A stretch of DNA of 64,000 nucleotides. Source: Camelus dromedarius (taxonomy: Eukaryota). The notes under the pieces were generated by a model, which did no database searches, had not been told where the DNA came from, and was given only the letters and a program-made list of their open reading frames with translations. The stretch is from contig NC_087458.1 of assembly GCF_036321535.1 (NCBI RefSeq), forward strand, positions 7,254,001 through 7,318,000, given 5' to 3'. Shown here piece after piece: positions 18,772-61,790 of this stretch; within the stretch, counting starts at the first letter, position 1; every line of letters begins with the position of its first letter. The position numbers and the translations under genes were made by a program.

Positions 18772-21700
18772 CAGTTGACTCTTGAACAAGAAATTGAACT
18801 GTGTGGGTCCACTCACACACAGATTTTTTTCAATAAATACATTGGAAAAATTTAGGAGGATTACAGCAATTTGAAAAACCCTCAAACTACAGAGCCTAGC
18901 AATATCAAAATTTTAAGAAAAAGCTAGGTGTGTCATGAACGCATAAAATACATGTAGCTATTAGCCTATTTTATCATTTACTACCATAAAATATATCAAA
19001 ATCTATTACAAAAAGCTAAATTTATCAAAATTTACACACACACTACAGCCCGTAGATGGTGCCATTCACAATCAATAGAAAACGCAACCAAATGTTAAAA
19101 TGCAGTATTAAATCATAACTGCATCAAATGAATTGTGGTACACACTGCCCTACTGTAATCATTTCATATGATTATACCTCCTGTTGCTACTGCAGGGAGC
19201 TCAAGTTTTGCAAGTATCTGCTTAAAACATCTCTGCCTGAGTAGTCATGTCTCCAGTAAATTGCATATTGTTGTAGAAAGTGATCTCTTGTGCTTCTTGA
19301 GTATTTTTCGTGTTTAGTGCAATACCATAGACCTTGAATAACACTATGGGACCCACACAAAGTGATGCTGGAAGTGGTCCCAAGAAGCAAAGAAAAGTCA
19401 TGACATTACAAGAAAACACTAAATTGTTTCATGTGTACCACAGGTTGAGGTCAGCAGCTGCAGTTTCCTACCATTTCAAGATAAATGAATCCAGCATAAG
19501 GATCGTAGTGCAAAAAAAAAAGAAGTTTGTGAAGCCATAGCTGCAGATATGCCAGCAGATGTGAAAACCTTGCACTTTCTGTGAAACACCTTTTATATCT
19601 CATATTAAAAANNNNNNNNNNNNNNNNNNNNNNNNNNNNNNNNNNNNNNNNNNNNNNNNNNNNNNNNNNNNNNNNNNNNNNNNNNNNNNNNNNNNNNNNN
19701 NNNNNNNNNNNNNNNNNNNNNNNNNNNNNNNNNNNNNNNNNNNNNNNNNNNNNNNNNNNNNNNNNNTTGCTAATTTTAGAAAGAGGTTTGGCTTCAAAAC
19801 CGTCAAGATAACAGGAGAAGCAGCCTCTGCTGATTNNNNNNNNNNNNNNNNNNNNNNNNNNNNNNNNNNNNNNNNNNNNNNNNNNNNNNNNNNNNNNNNN
19901 NNNNNNNNNNNNNNNNNNNNNNNNNNNNNNNNNNNNNNNNNNNNNNNNNNNNNNNNNNNNNNNNNNNNNGTAAGGAAGAGACTTAGCACCAGGATTTAAG
20001 GCAGGAAGGGACAGGCTAACTCTACTGCTGTGTGCAAATGCAGTTGAGTTTATGACCAGGACTGCCCTTGTCAATAAAGCTGCTACTTGAAGGGAAAAGA
20101 TAAACACCAGCTGCCAGTGTTTGGTTGTACAAAAGAAGGCCTGGATAACAAGAACCCTTTTTCTGGATTGGTTCCATCCATAATTTGTCCCTGAAATCAG
20201 AAAGTACCTGGCCAGTAAGGGGACTGCCTTTTAAAGTTCTTTTGATATTGGACAATGCCCCTGGCCACCCAGAACCCCATGTGTTCAACATCAAAGACAT
20301 CTAAGCGATCTACTTGCCTCCAAACACATCTCTAATTCAGCCTCTAGATCAAAGGGTCATAGGAACCTTTAAGGCTCATTATACACAGTAACCTATGGGA
20401 AGAGTTATCAACACTACAGAAGAGATCCGAATAGAAAGAATGTCATGTAAGTCTGGAAGGATTACACCATTGAAGACACCATCATTTTTACAGAAAAATC
20501 CATGAGAGCCATCAAACATGAAGCAATAAATTTCTCCTGGAGAAAACTGTGTCCAGACATTGTGCATGACTTCACGGGATTTACAACAGAGCCAATCAAG
20601 GACATCATGAGATGGTGGATATGGCCAAAAAATGATGAGGGGNNNNNNNNNNNNNNNNNNNNNNNNNNNNNNNNNNNNNNNNNNNNNNNNNNNNNNNNNN
20701 NNNNNNNNNNNNNNNNNNNNNNNNNNNNNNNNNNNNNNNNNNNNNNNNNNNNNNNNNNNNNNNNNNNNNNNNNNNNNCAGCAATGCCAGAAAACAAACTG
20801 ACATTAGACAATCTGGCAGAAGGGTTCCAAGTATTCAAGATGGTTTTCGACTTCTTTTACATGAACCCTTNNNNNNNNNNNNNNNNNNNNNNNNNNNNNN
20901 NNNNNNNNNNNNNNNNNNNNNNNNNNNNNNNNNNNNNNNNNNNNNNNNNNNNNNNNNNNNNNNNNNNNNNNNNNNNNNNNNNNNNNNNNNNNNNNNNNNN
21001 NNNNNNNNNNNNNNNNNNNNNNNNNNNNNNNNNNNNNNNNNNNNNNNNNNNNNNNNNNNNNNNNNNNNNNNNNNNNNNNNNNNNNNNNNNNNNNNNNNNN
21101 NNNNNNNNNNNNNNNNNNNNNNNNNNNNNNNNNNNNNNNNNNNNNNNNNNNNNNNNNNNNNNNNNNNNNNNNNNNNNNNNNNNNNNNNNAGGTAATAAAC
21201 TTATCTGTTGTGTACGTTTATCTCTGGGAAGACCTAAAACTTGTACGGCAAGAACTGTATGAATTGTTTTTGTGTCATCACCATTGCCACTGCCTAATTA
21301 TTCATCATGTAGAACATCACGTGCCAGACTTGTACTGAAGTGGACAGCCTGTCCTTACTTAGGCATAAGATGAGTGATATTTAATATAAAATTAATAATG
21401 TGCTAGTTTTCTTACTGATTTATAGCTTTGCTTTCAAAGAATTACATTACTACACAGTATTTCTCACTAATTAGAGAAAACATCATCAGGCTATCATCAC
21501 ATTTTTTAAAAAAATGTAACAATGATTCTAATCCTGTACATGAATATACCTGTAATATTGTACGCCATAAAACTTTTATAACCATTCATTAGTATATAGG
21601 CTAGGCTACTGTGAAGCAATAGTACTGATTACACTAGGACACCATCAAGCAATCATACTGCTGCTTCTTCATTATATGAAGAATGAATTATTACACCTGT

Positions 21701-29371: not shown

Positions 29372-31010
29372 ATTTATAACAGCTTTATTAAGATATAATT
29401 TACATACCATAAAACTCACCCTTCTAAAGTGTATAATTGAGTGGATTTTACTATATTCAAAGAGTTGTGGGACCTGATATCACCACTATCTAATACCAAA
29501 ATGTTTTCATCACCCCCAAAAGAAACTCCCTCCATTCCCCTGAGCAGTCACTTCCCATTCTGCCCTGCTCCCACTCCTGGATAACCACTAAATTTCTGTC
29601 TCTATGGATTTGCTTATGCTGGACATTTTATATAAAAAGATTCATACACTTTATGCGACCTTTTATCTCTGCCTTCTTTAACTCAGCAAAACATTTTCAA
29701 AGTTCATCCATTTTGCAGCATGTATCATTACTTCATTCCTTTTTATTGCAAAATAATATTCCATTATATGGATATACCATATTTAGTCATCCATTTATCA
29801 ACTGATAAAAACTTGGGCTGTTTGCATTTGGGGGCTATTACAAATATGCTGTTATGAACATTTGTGTACACACTTTTGCATGGACATATGTTTTCTTTCT
29901 TTTTTTTTTCTTTTTTTGTTTTTGTTTTTTCGTTCATATGTTTTCAATTCTCTTGGAGTGAAATTGTTGGGTCATATGGTAACTATGTCTAACTTTCTGA
30001 GCAACCACCAAACCATTTCCCACAGTGGCAACACAGTTTTACATTCCCAAAAGCAATATGAGGGTTCCACATTTCTTCACATCCTCGCCAGCACTCAATA
30101 TTATCCATGTTTTTTTTTATTATAGCTATACTAGTGGGTGAGAAGAGGNNNNNNNNNNNNNNNNNNNNNNNNNNNNNNNNNNNNNNNNNNNNNNNNNNNN
30201 NNNNNNNNNNNNNNNNNNNNNNNNNNNNNNNNNNNNNNNNNNNNNNNNNNNNNNNNNNNNNNNNNNNNNNNNNNNNNNNNNNNNNNNNNNNNNNNNNNNN
30301 NNNNNNNNNNNNNNNNNNNNNNNNNNNNATACAAGACCCTTATCAGATAGGTGATTTGCAATTATTTTCTCCTGTTTTGTGGGTTGTCTTTACTTTTCTG
30401 ATATATCCTTTGAGACACAAAAGTTTTTAATTTTGATGAGGTCAAATTATTTATTTTTTCATCATTTGCACTTTTGGTATTATATCTAAGAAATCACTGC
30501 CTAATCAAAGGTCACAAGGATTTACTGTTTTCTTCCAAGAGTTCTATACTTTTAGCTCATACATTTAGATCAATGGTCTATTTTCAATTAATTTTCATGT
30601 GTGGTGTGAGCAAAGGGTCCAACTTTATACTTTTGCGTGTGGATTTCCAGTTGCACAGCACCATTTGTTGAAAGACTATTCTTTTCCCATTAATTGGTCT
30701 TGGCACACTTGTCAAAGATTAACTGACTACAGTTTAAAAGTTTATTTTTAGACTCTCAATTCTGTTCCATTGATCTGTATGTCTATTCTTATGCCAGTAC
30801 CAGACTGTCTTGATTTCTGCAACTTTGTCATAAGTTTTGAAATCATTAAGTACAGACCTCCAACTTTGTTCTTTTTCAAGACTGTTTTGGTTATTCTGGG
30901 TCCCTTGCATTTCCATGTGAATTTTAGGATTAGCTTACAATTTCTGCAAAAAACAAAGCAGCTAGGACTTGGATAGGGATTGTGTTGAGTATGTAGATCA
31001 GTTTAGGAAG
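29372..31010 (-). mobile_element. Old L1 fragment (3'UTR plus end of ORF2), with an N-run at 30149-30328
   Basis: Minus-strand peptide [30 protein letters not shown] matches the L1 ORF2 C-terminal motif. Confidence 0.85.
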
Positions 31011-34673: not shown

Positions 34674-34813
34674 NNNNNNNNNNNNNNNNNNNNNNNNNNN
34701 NNNNNNNNNNNNNNNNNNNNNNNNNNNNNNNNNNNNNNNNNNNNNNNNNNNNNNNNNNNNNNNNNNNNNNNNNNNNNNNNNNNNNNNNNNNNNNNNNNNN
34801 NNNNNNNNNNNNN
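34674..34813 (-). CDS. GON4L: GON4L exon 9, inferred to lie inside this N-run (expected ~120 nt, SLLESDVES...GILSE-like)
   Basis: Recalled GON4L has ~40 aa between exon 8 and exon 10 peptides; I found no candidate elsewhere in 34114-35704; a T-rich tract (GATTTGTTTT on minus) runs into the 140-N block. The exon sequence itself is not visible. Confidence 0.6.
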
Positions 34814-36114: not shown

Positions 36115-36165
36115 CTTAATTTCATTGGCCTTCTTAATTGGTGAAATATTCCATGTTGGAATTAC
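36115..36165 (-). CDS. GON4L: GON4L exon 7 (VIPTWNISPIKKANEIK)
   Basis: CAG acceptor; AAG|GTAAAC donor; 51 nt, phase 0-0. Confidence 0.93.
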
Positions 36166-37481
36166 CTGCCAACAAAGAATGAAAATAATTAACTTCTCTT
36201 AATTGAAATAGGCTATCTTCCATTTTTACTTCTTTACCATCACAAATAGCCATCAGACTGACATGTAGCTGCAGTGATCTAAGGGTACTGATTATCCCCA
36301 AGGACACACTTGCAAATATTTATCAGTGCCTGAGAGAAGAATTTCACTTCATTTCATCAGCATTTCTGCCTTAAACCTAGTTAGATTCTGTATTATCTGT
36401 AAATGGACAAAGTGTCTGTCTTGTCTACCTTATATCACAGTTTGGGTTCACATGGAATAATGAATGTGAAAAACTATTTGTAAACAACAATGGTACACAA
36501 ATCTAAGATATTATAGGTGACAGGAGCCTTTTGCCGTCAGTATTTTTTTAATCAATTATTTAAATCCACCGTAAGTATGCCTCCAAAAACTCAGCCATGA
36601 AAAATTCTGAGGGAAGGATTTAGAGGTGAAGTGCCAAGTTGTACACAACTCATCTTCAAACAGTACAGGAAAAAACAATAAGTAGACATAGAGAGATATA
36701 AAGCAAATATGTCAAAATTTTGCAATTGTTAAATCTAGACAGAACCTAGATTCACTGTAAAATTCTTCCAACTTTTTGTGTGTTTTAAAACAATAGAGTT
36801 GACAGGGGAGAAGTTTTCTTGTTTGTTTTTTTTCTTTTTAAGAGACGCTAGCTTTTGGTTTATTTGAAAATAGAAAATGAATCGAGCCCCAAAGACCACA
36901 CCCAATGTGGTCAGAGACAGCCAAAGAGCAGCCCTGGCAGGGTGATGAGGGGGAGAAGTTTTTAAAAGAATTCTTTAAAACCTCTTCCATACTCCTGACA
37001 AAATGCCATTAGAGTGTATAATTTCTTGACCATCTAATTATGAACCAATCAAAATCATCTTATGAACAAAATCCAGTAAGTCATTAGGTTCTGTTTCTAT
37101 AAGAAGTCTGAGGCCCTCCACATCTCCTCAGCCCTGCCATGTTCTGGCTACTTACCTAGCTCTGTGTAGCCTGGCCCAAAATAGGGTAAAGGGAATGATA
37201 TGATTCAGGGCCATAACCCTTTCATCTTTGTTTCTGACCCAATCAATGTCCTTACTATCAAATCCATCAGGAAGCAGTCAGTCTATTAAGCATTAAGAAG
37301 CAAGAGACCTGGACTCTAATCCTTGTTCTCCCACATAAACTACAGTATGCGTTGTCCAACTTCTCTACAACTATATACATGGTTGGTAAACATAGTCCAG
37401 AGCCTGATTTGGATCTCCTTGGGGTTTTTTTAGAAACAATTATGGAATTAATGTTAATTATATTCTATATGTCAGGCTGAC

Positions 37482-37580
37482 TTCACAGAACTTCTGTCTC
37501 ACTGATGGCTGCTTTCATCATAGCTGCCACATGCTCATTTGTGATTACTTCCTGGAGAAAGATAAAATTTCATTTAACTA
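37482..37580 (-). pseudogene. Partial duplicate of GON4L exon 5 with its upstream acceptor region ([20 protein letters not shown] then VL*), in intron 6
   Basis: 55/60 nt identical to the first 60 nt of exon 5 (39244-39185); about 25-28 nt of upstream intron also conserved; intact CAG acceptor at 37552-37554; TGA at 37485-37483. Confidence 0.9.
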
Positions 37581-37713
37581 GAGTTAGTCAATGAGACCAA
37601 AAAAAAAAAAAAAAAATTACAGATGCAGCTGTCAAAAAAAACCAATGCACAGGGGAGCAGAATTTGCCACCCTAAAATATGTTTCTTTGGCATTAAAAAA
37701 AAAAGCCATTGTA

Positions 37714-38070
37714 AACTTAGGCTGCATCAAGGGGAGATACGGTATCTGGAACATTGAGAGGATAGCCTAAATTTAATCTGTACTAGTTAAACCACATCTG
37801 GATATGGATACACTTTTAAAAGGATATGGACAAACCAGAATCATATGGAAGAAAGAGATCATATTGGTGAAGGTACTCAAAGTCTTGTCATATGAAGACC
37901 AATAAAAATTGGGGGATACTCAGCATCAAAAAATGTTATGGGGGAGGGTATAGCTCAGTGGTAGAGTGCATGCTTAGCAAGCATGAGGTCCTAGATACAA
38001 TCCCAGCACTTCCTTCTAAAAATAAATAAGTAAATAAACCTAATTACTTCCCCTCCCCAAAAAAAACCCA

Positions 38071-38106
<36 letters not shown>

Positions 38107-38440
38107 CTAATTACCTTCCCGCCCCCCAAAAAATATTATGAAAAGATATACTGGTTTTCCTCAACTAGAGGAAAGGTCATGCGGAAGAAGAACAGCCATG
38201 TCTTCCATAGGGCTGCAAGGAACAGAATCAGACAGACAAATACTACAATATGCATTTTAGGTCTACGGGCCAAATATTCCTTACTCTCAGAGACAGAATG
38301 GACTCCAGCAGGGCTGTCACCTGCCTTGTCACAGAAGGTAAGTACAAGCTGGACAAATGCTAGTTAAGCAGATATAACATGGTTCCCAGCGTCAAAGGGC
38401 CTGCTGTACCAGTATGCTTCAAAAGTCTTCAAGTGGTTTT
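37714..38440 (+). mobile_element. L3/CR1 remnant interrupted by a SINE
   Basis: CTGCATCAAG..ACCACATCTGG..AAGGATATGGACAAAC..GTCATATGAAG resembles CR1 ORF2 3' sequence; right boundary uncertain. Confidence 0.5.
37940..38128 (+). mobile_element. tRNA-derived SINE (camelid Vic-1-like) with (AATC)9 and a duplicated tail
   Basis: A box TAGCTCAGTGG; degenerate B box; TSD AAAAAATGTTATG / AAAAAATATTATG. Confidence 0.8.
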
Positions 38441-38940
38441 CACATCTTAGTGTGCAAAAGAATGTACTGTTATGTTTTTAGCAATGCGCATTCCCTGGCC
38501 CTACCCACGGGTCCCGATTCCTAGGTTCCCGATTCCTAGGTTCGGGGTAAGCTCAAGCATGTGCATTTTTAATAAGCACTCCTGAAGGACCTCACACCAG
38601 GGGGATCTTGATGCAAGTGGTCCCTGGGACATAATTTGAAATATACTACTTTAAACACTCTGCCACATACCTCACAACATGAATAGAAAACCTGACCTCA
38701 CTCATCGCTCTCAACTATTCCAAATGGTTATCTACCTAGCACTTCCAGAAAGCAAATAAAATAAAAATAAACTATGTTAATGATTTCATACATTTTGTCT
38801 CTACATGTCTACTTGTCTTTTACAAATATTTCTTCAAGGAGGCAAACCCAGATCGTGATAAATCTTCCCTATATTTTTTTTCCTGGAATTAGATATTATT
38901 TACAAAGCTAAACAAACAATAAAGAAAAAACAACACCCAC

Positions 38941-38991
38941 CACTCCTTTTTCCACCACTTCCTTTAGTTTAGAGCGTGTCATTTTGGGCTC
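38941..38991 (-). CDS. GON4L: GON4L exon 6 (EPKMTRSKLKEVVEKGV)
   Basis: TAG acceptor; GTG|GTGGGT donor; 51 nt, phase 0-0. Confidence 0.93.
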
Positions 38992-39169
38992 CTAAGAGGG
39001 AAATATCAGAAGAAAACAGTCAATAAAAATATCGAGTGATTCTTGGGTTTTGCGATGCTAACCTTGCCCCCAACTGTCAAATTATTTACAAACTCCCAAG
39101 TGATCCCGCACACTTAGCCAGTTTCAGACAGCTCTGTTTCATGACATTAAAATAACAATAACTACTCAC

Positions 39170-39244
39170 AAACATGGGCATATCTTCTGTCTCGCTGATG
39201 GCTGCTTTCATCATAGCTACCACGTGTTCATTTGTAATTACTTC
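39170..39244 (-). CDS. GON4L: GON4L exon 5 ([25 protein letters not shown])
   Basis: TAG acceptor; TTT|GTGAGT donor; 75 nt, phase 0-0. Confidence 0.95.
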
Positions 39245-39880
39245 CTAGAGAAAGATGAAATTTCACTTAATCCAACAAAGATGCATCACCTAGATAATAC
39301 CCATCTTTCTCTAATCCTTGTAGACTTATGTAGAGGATAAATGAGAGCTAGATACTCATATGGCTTCAGATTAGGGTAAAGCAAGGCAACTGAAAGCAAA
39401 GAAGCTTCTTTGCTTTCAGTTGGAGAGAAGTACACAGCTTCAACCAATGTAGCAGCAAACAGACCAACCTTATTGGTGGCTACTAAGAACAGGAATGGCT
39501 CACATAAAAAGAGATTCTTAAGCAAAACGGTAATAAACAATAAAGCCTTTATAAACAGCCGCATTGCTACATATCAAAGAATATGTGCAAAGTAGTGTAA
39601 GCTGTTAAGTGCGCATCTTTTCAGACACATCAGCCCACAAAAGAGAAAATCCACAACAAACATTATCATCTTCAAATCTTCTAAACAATACAATAAACAA
39701 TCAAATCAGTGGAAGGAAGCAGAGTAACAGTTTATCTTCCCAATTAAGCTCTTTACCATGTTTTCAGATTTCAAACTTGTGCTGAGTTTAAAGAGAAAGC
39801 TGTCTTAAAATGTTAAGTATTTTGCCACAGGTAACTCACAAAATTAGTAATTCATACATCAAGAGTCAAGAATTTCCTAA

Positions 39881-40015
39881 GGGGGAGGGAATAGCTTAGT
39901 GGTAGAGCGCATGCTTAGCATGCATGAGTTAGCATGCATGAGGTCCTGGGTTCAATCCCCAATACCTCCTCTAAAAATAAAGAAATAAATCTAATTACCT
40001 CTCCCCTCCAAAAAA
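39881..40015 (+). mobile_element. tRNA-derived SINE (Vic-1-like) with an internal 14-bp tandem duplication
   Basis: A box; B box GGTTCAATCC; TTAGCATGCATGAG twice; TSD AAGAATTTCCT. Confidence 0.85.
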
Positions 40016-40084
40016 AGAATTTCCTGAATATTGGAAATGGAAAAAGTTCCATTCCAATTACACGGCTGCCCCAGCCTTACTCAC

Positions 40085-60963: not shown

Positions 60964-61790
60964 ATGTGTCACCAGTGGTGGCCGGCCTCATTGGGGCCTC
61001 TGTGCTGGTGGTGTGTGTCTCAGTGACCGTCTTTGTCTGGACATGCTGCCACCAGCAGGCAGAAAAGAAGCACAAGACTCCACCATACAAGTTTATTCAC
61101 ATGCTCAAAGGCATCAGCATATACCCAGAGACCCTCAGCAACAAGAAGAAAATCATCAAAGTGCGGAGAGACAAAGATGGCTCTGGGAGGGAAGGTGGAC
61201 GTGGGAACCTGTTGGTGGACGCAGCAGAGGCTGGCCTGCTGGGCCAAGACAAGGGTTCTAGAGGACCTAACTCTGGATCTTGTATAGATCAGTTACCCAT
61301 CAAAGTGGACTATGGGGAAGAACTGAGGAGCCCCATTGCGAGCCTGACCCCCGGGGAGAGCAAAACTACTTCTCCATCATCTCCAGAGGAGGATGTCATG
61401 CTAGGATCCCTCACCTTCTCAGTGGACTATAACTTCCCGAAAAAAGCCCTGGTGGTGACAATCCAGGAGGCTCATGGGCTGCCGGTGATGGATGACCAGN
61501 NNNNNNNNNNNNNNNNNNNNNNNNNNNNNNNNNNNNNNNNNNNNNNNNNNNNNNNNNNNNNNNNNNNNNNNNNNNNNNNNNNNNNNNNNNNNNNNNNNNN
61601 NNNNNNNNNNNNNNNNNNNNNNNNNNNNNNNNNNNNNNNGCAGGACCTGGTACTGCACTTCCTCGTCCTCAGCTTTGACCGCTTCTCCCGGGATGACGTC
61701 ATTGGGGAGGTCATGGTGCCGTTGGCTGGGGTAGACCCCAGCACAGGCAAGGTACAGCTGACCAGGGACATCATCAAAAGGAACATCCAG
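60964..61790 (+). CDS. SYT11: Synaptotagmin-11 exon 2: transmembrane segment, Cys39/Cys40, linker and C2A domain (61500-61639 masked)
   Basis: CAG acceptor; CAG|GTGAGG donor; 827 nt, phase 1 to 0; DVSPVVAGLIGASVLVVCVSVTVFVWTCCHQQ...LGSLTFSVDYNFPKKALVVTIQEAHGLP...DRFSRDDVIGEV; frame kept across the N-run. Confidence 0.96.

What the first reader, a model, noticed from the sequence alone, without database searches (positions are those of the whole stretch)
37482..37580. Duplicated GON4L exon 5 in intron 6, splice-ready, with mostly synonymous divergence
Seen: a copy of the first 60 nt of exon 5 plus ~25-28 nt of its branch/polypyrimidine/AG region lies 1.7 kb downstream, between exons 6 and 7, with no accompanying exon 6 copy that I could find. 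There are five differences in 60 nt: four synonymous (ATT/ATC, GAA/GAG, CAC/CAT, AGC/AGT) and one V>A. Phase 0 matches exon 6. Three possible donors follow: GAA|GTTCTG (60 nt, in frame, giving an e5-e6-e5' repeat), CT|GTGAAG (65 nt, frameshift) and A|GTCAGC (70 nt, includes TGA; GTCAG starts two real donors in this gene). Inference: either a regulated poison exon or a repeat-extending cassette. Caveats: two synonymous changes are CpG-type transitions, the real exon accumulates only synonymous changes, and n=5 is too small to prove selection.
Basis: partly seen in the sequence, partly recalled or inferred. Interest (0 to 1): 0.72.

Follow-up and report, generated by a model that had tools for sequence, protein, structure and literature searches.

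The report
Decaying exon-5 copy in GON4L intron
A roughly 95-base piece of a GON4L coding exon, with its upstream splice signal, was copied into a nearby intron before the laurasiatherian mammals diverged; it looks like an ordinary leftover pseudo-exon, though nobody has yet checked RNA reads to see whether it is ever spliced.

Summary
On the minus strand of a camelid GON4L gene, 92 nt at 37577-37486 match 39270-39179 without gaps (82/92, E 4e-25). That is 26 nt of acceptor region plus the first 60-66 nt of exon 5, copied into the intron between exons 6 and 7. No exon-6 copy exists.

The functional reading is not supported.
- **Age:** the copy is also in alpaca, gray whale, jaguar, a horseshoe bat and a mole, so it predates the laurasiatherian radiation.
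- **Decay elsewhere:** jaguar lost the acceptor AG, mole lost all three candidate donor GTs, and bat has frameshifting deletions and a stop. Pig, guinea pig and tree shrew have deleted the site.
- **Synonymous pattern:** three of the four synonymous differences arose in the constrained real exon. The copy's own camelid changes are one synonymous and one V>A.
- **Donors:** all three proposed donors score below every real donor I scored in the gene; the in-frame one is the weakest.
- **Annotation:** none of about 300 retrieved GON4L proteins contains an exon 6→copy junction.

In camel plus whale the copy changes about three times slower than its flanks (p≈0.01), so a lineage-restricted poison exon is not excluded.

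The parts
37486..37577 (-). 92-nt copy (e5'): 26 nt of acceptor region plus 66 nt of exon-5-like sequence
   Evidence: Ungapped 82/92 match to 39179-39270, E 4e-25
37552..37553 (-). Acceptor AG of the copy (ttttatctttctccAG|G), as good as the real exon-5 acceptor
   Evidence: Retained in camel, alpaca, whale, bat and mole; mutated to GG in jaguar
37492..37551 (-). Exon-like 60 nt reading [20 protein letters not shown]
   Evidence: Five differences from real exon 5, of which only two arose in the copy
37583..37590 (-). Branch-point-like TGACTAAC about 33 nt upstream of the AG. It lies outside the duplicated segment, preceded by a T18 run at 37599-37616
   Evidence: The motif is shared by camel, alpaca, whale, bat and mole. 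Branch-point function is inferred only
37476..37491 (-). Three overlapping weak candidate donors: GAA|GTTCTG (60 nt), TCT|GTGAAG (65 nt), GAA|GTCAGC (70 nt)
   Evidence: PWM scores -4.3, 0.3 and 2.7, against 4.6-12.5 for real donors. All three GTs are lost in mole; the region is changed in bat
37250..37255 (-). Downstream donor-like ATA|GTAAGG, which would give a 296-nt pseudo-exon
   Evidence: PWM 6.0. Use is inferred, no RNA evidence
37150..37155 (-). Consensus donor TAG|GTAAGT, which would give a 396-nt pseudo-exon; specific to camelids
   Evidence: PWM 11.0. Whale, bat and mole have GA and jaguar has GG at the GT
39170..39244 (-). Real GON4L exon 5 (75 nt), source of the copy
   Evidence: Its protein sequence is invariant in 9 mammals
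38941..38991 (-). Real exon 6 (51 nt, phase 0 to 0); no copy of it exists
   Evidence: Skipped in alpaca isoform X2
36115..36165 (-). Real exon 7.
   Evidence: Coordinates only; no letters were sent to any search tool afterwards
37937..38065 (+). tRNA-derived SINE upstream of the copy; it resembles the SINE at 39878-40016
   Evidence: Rfam tRNA, 34 bits. This is repeat-family resemblance, not part of the duplication

Best explanation
This is an old, small intragenic duplication. A patch of about 95 nt (roughly 35 nt of the exon-5 acceptor region plus the first 61 nt of exon 5) was copied into the exon 6-7 intron of GON4L shortly before the laurasiatherian mammals diverged. Because the patch ended inside the exon, it brought a good 3' splice site but no 5' splice site.

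Since then it has behaved as a non-coding pseudo-exon. It drifts at the intronic rate in carnivore, bat and mole lineages and has been deleted in pig, guinea pig and tree shrew. It is still nearly pristine in the slowly evolving camelid and whale lineages.

In the camel it most likely contributes nothing to the protein. At most it is a cryptic 3' splice site that gives rare transcripts carrying a premature stop, which nonsense-mediated decay would clear.

Shown: the duplication, its minimum age, its decay pattern and the weak donors. Inferred: the patch-insertion mechanism and the absence or rarity of splicing.
For: - Duplicate confirmed, with no homology beyond about 96 nt in whale or jaguar.
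- Orthologous copies in alpaca (98.9%), gray whale (94.4%), jaguar (88.5%), Rhinolophus bat (82.8%) and Talpa mole (82%).
- The inferred ancestral copy equals the inferred ancestral source over the shared part.
- Splice signals are not conserved: jaguar CAG>CGG, mole has lost all three donor GTs, bat has 2-nt and 3-nt deletions with a stop.
- The site is deleted in pig, guinea pig and tree shrew.
- Lineage-specific substitution rate in jaguar+bat+mole is 31/249 in the copy against 779/5238 in flanks (OR 0.81, p=0.32).
- Parsimony steps per site are 0.48 for the copy against 0.06-0.09 for real exons 6 and 7.
- 12 non-synonymous against 7 synonymous changes in the copies, while the real exon is invariant at protein level.
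- All candidate donors fall below all real donors scored.
- No exon 6→copy junction in about 300 GON4L proteins and fragments, including RNA-assembly-derived ones.
Against: - In camel plus whale the copy has 5 lineage-specific changes where about 13.5 are expected from flanks (OR 0.35, p=0.012).
- Camel-whale identity is 94.6% in the copy against 82-88% in flanks.
- The 60-nt body is among the 0.4% most conserved intronic 60-nt windows in a 6-species alignment.
- The acceptor, a branch-point-like motif and a T-run are intact in camelids. Camelids also have a consensus donor 396 nt downstream.
- Four runs of unknown type (study P11) hold the copy's words without being holders of the surrounding 3.4 kb. 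This is an unchecked lead.
- No RNA reads were examined.
Confidence: 0.7

Rival explanations
1. Lineage-restricted poison exon. In camelids, and perhaps whales, the inherited acceptor pairs with a donor that arose locally (65-nt, 70-nt, or the camelid-specific 296-nt and 396-nt options). Inclusion introduces a premature stop, and NMD then lowers GON4L output in a regulated way.
For: - Slower evolution of the copy in camel plus whale (OR 0.35, p=0.012).
- Intact AG, polypyrimidine tract and branch-point-like motif.
- All versions except the 60-nt one carry or cause an early stop.
- Consensus TAG|GTAAGT at 37155 in camelids.
- Study P11 runs hold the copy's words but not the surrounding intron.
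Against: - The nearby donors are weaker than every real donor scored in the gene, and the whale lacks the strong downstream donor.
- Pig, also a cetartiodactyl, has deleted the region.
- Splice sites are lost in jaguar and mole.
- No annotated or assembled product carries it.
- p≈0.01 rests on 5 substitutions, and the body has no CpG.
Confidence: 0.17
2. In-frame cassette exon. The 60-nt version inserts 20 residues (a second [19 protein letters not shown] unit) between exons 6 and 7.
For: Phase 0 on both sides and an open frame in camel, alpaca and whale.
Against: - It needs GAA|GTTCTG, the weakest candidate (-4.3 bits, 19th percentile of intronic GTs).
- The frame is broken in bat, and there are 4-6 non-synonymous nucleotide changes in jaguar and mole.
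- No isoform with two MMKAAI motifs in any mammal retrieved.
Confidence: 0.02
3. Similarity kept up by gene conversion from the constrained real exon, or a non-exonic role such as a decoy 3' splice site or intronic splicing element. Either could explain the slow change in cetartiodactyls without the copy being an exon.
For: - Camel and whale copies look near-ancestral.
- A strong acceptor without a partner donor is the anatomy expected of a decoy.
Against: - The camel copy lacks the camelid real-exon changes (ATT, CAC, AGC), and the whale copy lacks the whale real-exon changes (GTA GTC, GACGGAG). So there was no recent conversion.
- The homology tract of about 95 nt is short for conversion (own knowledge).
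- A decoy role is contradicted by AG loss in jaguar and by three independent deletions.
Confidence: 0.08

Closest known systems
Unannotated intronic copies of neighbouring exons (tandem or intragenic exon duplications; Ivanov & Pervouchine 2022, PMC9013439; Letunic et al. 2002 as cited there)
   Same: It is an exon-derived segment lying in an intron of the same gene, not annotated and not a transposon. PMC9013439 reports 4,027 such intronic targets in human genes, only some of them with RNA support.
   Different: The copy is partial (acceptor plus 80% of the exon, no donor). It is not adjacent to its source, since exon 6 lies between them. Its splice signals have decayed in several orders.
Conserved poison exons coupled to NMD (for example SCN1A 20N and the ultraconserved poison exons of SR-protein genes)
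   Same: It is an intronic exon-like element whose inclusion would bring in a premature stop.
   Different: Known conserved poison exons keep both splice sites and are often more conserved than the coding exons (own knowledge). Here the sites are lost in jaguar and mole, and the rate is near the intronic rate outside camel and whale. Inclusion has not been shown.
Mutually exclusive or cassette exons born by exon duplication (for example SCN alpha exon 5a/5b, 10.1101/2025.08.16.670673)
   Same: Origin by duplication of a coding exon within the gene.
   Different: Those copies are full length, keep the frame and are under protein-level constraint. This one is truncated, has no competent in-frame donor and shows no protein-level constraint.
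Pseudoexons and cryptic exons activated by deep-intronic mutations (PMC8819188)
   Same: There is a good 3' splice site in an intron with only weak or distant donors. A single donor-creating change could activate it, and camelids already carry a consensus donor 396 nt downstream.
   Different: No activating variant or aberrant transcript is known here.

Membership tests
Intragenic exon-duplication relic (pseudo-exon) | Significant sequence similarity to an exon of the same gene, located in an intron, on the same strand | tested here: met
   82/92 ungapped, E 4e-25, same strand, between exons 6 and 7
Intragenic exon-duplication relic (pseudo-exon) | Not explained by a transposable element or low-complexity sequence | tested here: met
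   The only other match in the window is the source exon. The nearby SINEs are separate elements
Intragenic exon-duplication relic (pseudo-exon) | Evolves without exon-like constraint (splice-site loss, indels, near-intronic rate) | tested here: met
   AG lost in jaguar, donor GTs lost in mole, frameshifts in bat, deletions in pig, guinea pig and tree shrew. Rate equals flanks in three lineages. Exception: slower in camel plus whale (p=0.012)
Conserved poison exon (alternative splicing coupled to NMD) | Splice junctions to the flanking exons observed in RNA | not testable with these tools
Protein databases show no junction product
Conserved poison exon (alternative splicing coupled to NMD) | Both splice sites conserved across species | tested here: not met
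   Acceptor lost in jaguar; donors lost in mole and changed in bat; the strong 396-nt donor is camelid-only
Conserved poison exon (alternative splicing coupled to NMD) | Inclusion introduces a premature termination codon upstream of later junctions | tested here: met
   The 65-nt version shifts the frame to an immediate stop. The 70-, 296- and 396-nt versions contain TGA
Conserved poison exon (alternative splicing coupled to NMD) | Sequence conservation above the intronic background | tested here: inconclusive
   0.48 steps/site against 0.66 for 200 nt of immediate downstream flank (about 0.77 for the average 60-nt intronic window). Significant only for camel plus whale
Duplication-derived coding cassette or mutually exclusive exon | Open frame and protein-level purifying selection in the copy | tested here: not met
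   Bat is frameshifted with a stop; 12 non-synonymous against 7 synonymous changes; dN/dS about 0.43, p=0.08 against neutral
Duplication-derived coding cassette or mutually exclusive exon | Competent in-frame donor and presence in protein isoforms | tested here: not met
   The in-frame donor scores -4.3 bits. No isoform with the insert in about 300 proteins

The most novel reading that the evidence does not exclude
A patch duplication of exon 5 gave GON4L a ready-made 3' splice site. In Cetartiodactyla (camelids, whales) this site has been recruited, with locally arisen donors, as a lineage-specific poison exon that tunes GON4L dosage through NMD. It would be a dated example (about 80-90 Myr, own estimate) of a poison exon born from a truncated exon copy, kept in some orders and decaying in others.
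Probability: 0.13. Interest if true: 0.45.

Novelty: new member of a known kind. Interest (0 to 1): 0.2.

Why it matters
As it stands, it matters little. Unannotated intronic exon copies are common, with thousands in human genes (PMC9013439), and this one shows the expected decay.

Its modest value is as a worked example. Five "mostly synonymous" differences between an exon and its copy say nothing about selection on the copy until the changes are polarised with outgroups. Here three of the four synonymous changes belong to the constrained source exon.

It also marks a strong intronic acceptor in a dosage-sensitive chromatin regulator. Biallelic GON4L variants cause a growth disorder (PMC13212936). 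In species that retain the acceptor, it could be activated by a single donor-creating mutation.

Tried and rejected
- **Second look-up of sequencing runs** on the 65-nt exon-like body. Only 3 sampled words. The holders came from the same intron-rich studies, plus study P11 of unknown type. This is not interpretable without laying reads.
- **Protein searches for an exon 6→copy product** in three length ranges. None found. Sensitivity is low for rare NMD isoforms.
- **Dating outside Laurasiatheria.** Gibbon and aardvark gene ranges were too long to fetch. Tree shrew and guinea pig have deletions across the site. The fox and the alpaca X4 proteins were not on record. The fallow deer look-up timed out twice.
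- **Metagenome scans** for the copy-specific junction sequence found nothing.
- **Larger-duplication hypothesis** (exon 5 to exon 6 block, or including the SINE). Rejected: no paralogous similarity beyond about 96 nt.
- **Recent gene conversion.** Rejected by lineage-specific changes that the copy and source do not share.
- **Rfam scan** of 36200-39400 found only the SINE's tRNA head.
- **Literature.** No paper links GON4L to a poison or cryptic exon at this position.

Full report
**What is there**

The window is a camelid GON4L locus on the minus strand. tblastn with Camelus bactrianus and Vicugna pacos GON4L proteins gives 97-99% and 96% identity. SYT11 lies downstream on the plus strand.

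The exons around the finding are:
- exon 4: 40291-40085
- exon 5: 39244-39170 (75 nt)
- exon 6: 38991-38941 (51 nt, phase 0 to 0)
- exon 7: 36165-36115

A 92-nt ungapped direct repeat joins 39270-39179 to 37577-37486. It has 82/92 identical bases and blastn E 4e-25, and it occurs nowhere else in the window. It comprises 26 nt of the exon-5 acceptor region, the AG (37553-37552) and the first 60-66 nt of the exon. After GAGACAGAAG the two sequences part.

There is no second exon 6. The tRNA-derived SINEs upstream of both copies are independent family members, and the DNA between SINE and exon copy does not align.

**How old it is and how large it was**

I fetched orthologous GON4L loci through the look-up of encoding contigs. 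The copy sits in the same intron in these species:

| Species | Locus and position | Identity to camel copy |
|---|---|---|
| Alpaca | L003 14675-14766 | 98.9% |
| Gray whale | L004 25597-25686 | 94.4% |
| Jaguar | L008 24991-25075 | 88.5% |
| Rhinolophus bat | L005 8819-8898 | 82.8% |
| Talpa mole | L007 14845-14933 | 82% |

So it predates the common ancestor of Laurasiatheria.

Whale, bat, mole and jaguar keep about 7-9 more nucleotides of source homology upstream (TTGCATAAAG...). Camelids lost these through a 5-nt deletion. The original patch was therefore about 95 nt.

In whale and jaguar there is no paralogous similarity beyond this patch. The inferred ancestral copy is identical to the inferred ancestral source. 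This fits a small templated insertion shortly before the laurasiatherian radiation, not an eroded large tandem duplication. The mechanism is inferred.

Pig lacks the region. Guinea pig and tree shrew have deletions or replacements spanning the site. Whether the copy ever existed in Euarchontoglires is therefore open. The gibbon and aardvark loci were too long to fetch.

**Is it kept as an exon?**

The splice signals are not conserved:
- Jaguar changed the acceptor CAG to CGG and lost 2 nt of the pyrimidine tract.
- Mole changed all three candidate donor GTs (GAAATTCTATGAAATC).
- Bat has 2-nt and 3-nt deletions in the body, which give a frameshift and a stop, and a 3-nt deletion in the donor region.

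Real exon 5 encodes the identical 25 residues in nine mammals, with synonymous changes only. The copies carry these protein-level changes:
- V>A in camelids
- K>Q in whale
- four amino-acid changes in jaguar
- five amino-acid changes (six non-synonymous nucleotide changes) in mole

Across the copy lineages I count 12 non-synonymous and 7 synonymous changes. That gives dN/dS of about 0.43, with p=0.08 against neutrality before allowing for transition bias.

Polarising the camel differences with outgroups shows that ATT (Camelus), CAC and AGC (camelids) are derived in the real exon. Only GAA>GAG and GTA>GCA arose in the copy.

**Rates**

In a six-species alignment the parsimony load is as follows:

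| Region | Steps per site |
|---|---|
| Copy | 0.48 |
| Immediate downstream flank (200 nt) | 0.66 |
| Average 60-nt intronic window | about 0.77 |
| Real exons 6 and 7 | 0.06-0.09 |

Lineage-specific substitutions in jaguar, bat and mole occur at the flank rate: 31/249 against 779/5238, OR 0.81, p=0.32.

Camel plus whale show 5 changes where about 13.5 are expected (OR 0.35, p=0.012). Camel-whale identity is 94.6% in the copy against 82-88% in flanks. This is the one observation that points to constraint. It rests on few sites in a CpG-free stretch, and pig, another cetartiodactyl, has deleted the element.

Recent gene conversion does not explain it. The copies lack the derived changes of their own species' real exon.

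**Splice competence in the camel**

The acceptor is as good as the real one (ttttatctttctccag against tttcatctttctctag). About 33 nt upstream sits a TGACTAAC motif, with a T18 run beyond it.

I scored donors with an approximate 5' splice-site matrix recalled from memory. It is useful only for ranking. The results are as follows:

| Donor | Score (bits) |
|---|---|
| 60-nt candidate (in frame) | -4.3 |
| 65-nt candidate | 0.3 |
| 70-nt candidate | 2.7 |
| Twelve real donors of this gene | 4.6 to 12.5 |

The candidates lie at the 19th, 61st and 79th percentile of the 149 GTs in the intron.

Better donors lie further downstream: ATA|GTAAGG at 37255 (6.0 bits, giving a 296-nt exon) and a consensus TAG|GTAAGT at 37155 (11.0 bits, giving a 396-nt exon). 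The second is camelid-specific.

Every version except the 60-nt one meets a stop at once. If the acceptor is ever used, the product should be an NMD substrate. This is an inference.

**Expression evidence**

None could be obtained. 

The run searches show the following:
- The RNA-labelled holders of this region carry most of the intron as well (share about 0.6), so they say nothing about splicing.
- Four runs of one study of unknown type (X33-X36) hold the copy's three sampled words without being holders of the 3.4-kb stretch. This is a lead only.

About 300 GON4L proteins and fragments, including products of RNA assemblies and all listed camelid isoforms, contain no exon 6→copy junction and no second MMKAAI motif in any mammal. 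This is weak negative evidence, because NMD isoforms are rarely assembled or annotated.

**Verdict**

The most likely reading (about 0.7) is a relic pseudo-exon about 80-90 Myr old (own estimate), created by a partial copy of exon 5. It decays neutrally in most lineages and is merely well preserved in slowly evolving camelids and whales.

A cetartiodactyl-restricted poison exon remains possible (about 0.15-0.2) and is directly testable with junction reads. The in-frame cassette is effectively excluded.

Unannotated intronic exon copies are a known and common class (PMC9013439), so novelty and interest are low.

Noticed in passing
not in window; proteins P0172-P0174, P0178, P0180, P0184: Camelids (alpaca, Bactrian, dromedary and wild camel) have annotated 'YY1AP1' proteins of 761-894 aa. 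The one compared, Bactrian camel P0174, is 93-97% identical to camel GON4L residues 631-1331. YY1AP1 is described as a primate-specific partial duplicate of GON4L (PMC2231382), so this suggests either an independent camelid duplication or an older one.
   Followed up: partly
window 38941-38991 (exon 6); alpaca protein P0179: Alpaca isoform X2 skips the 51-nt exon 6 in frame (DMPMF|VIPTWN). Isoform X3 (P0185) starts at the MMKAAI methionine inside exon 5. This implies annotated alternative splicing around these exons that does not involve the copy.
   Followed up: no
protein P0053 (Spinachia spinachia GON4L-like isoform): This stickleback protein repeats about 350 residues, including the exon 5-7 region, twice (MMKAAI at 152 and 504). 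It is either a large internal tandem duplication or an assembly or annotation artefact.
   Followed up: no
window 37286-37485 and 36960-37185: The intron downstream of the copy holds several blocks that are 80-85% identical to camel, averaged across whale, jaguar, bat and mole, which is as conserved as the copy itself. The whole intron evolves slowly, and this tempers any claim from the copy's conservation.
   Followed up: partly
I did not examine it.
   Followed up: no
window 19612-21189, 30149-30328, 34674-34813, 61500-61639: There are seven N runs of 134-319 nt. The one at 34674-34813 falls where a GON4L coding exon is expected (protein residues about 372-425 have no match).
   Followed up: no
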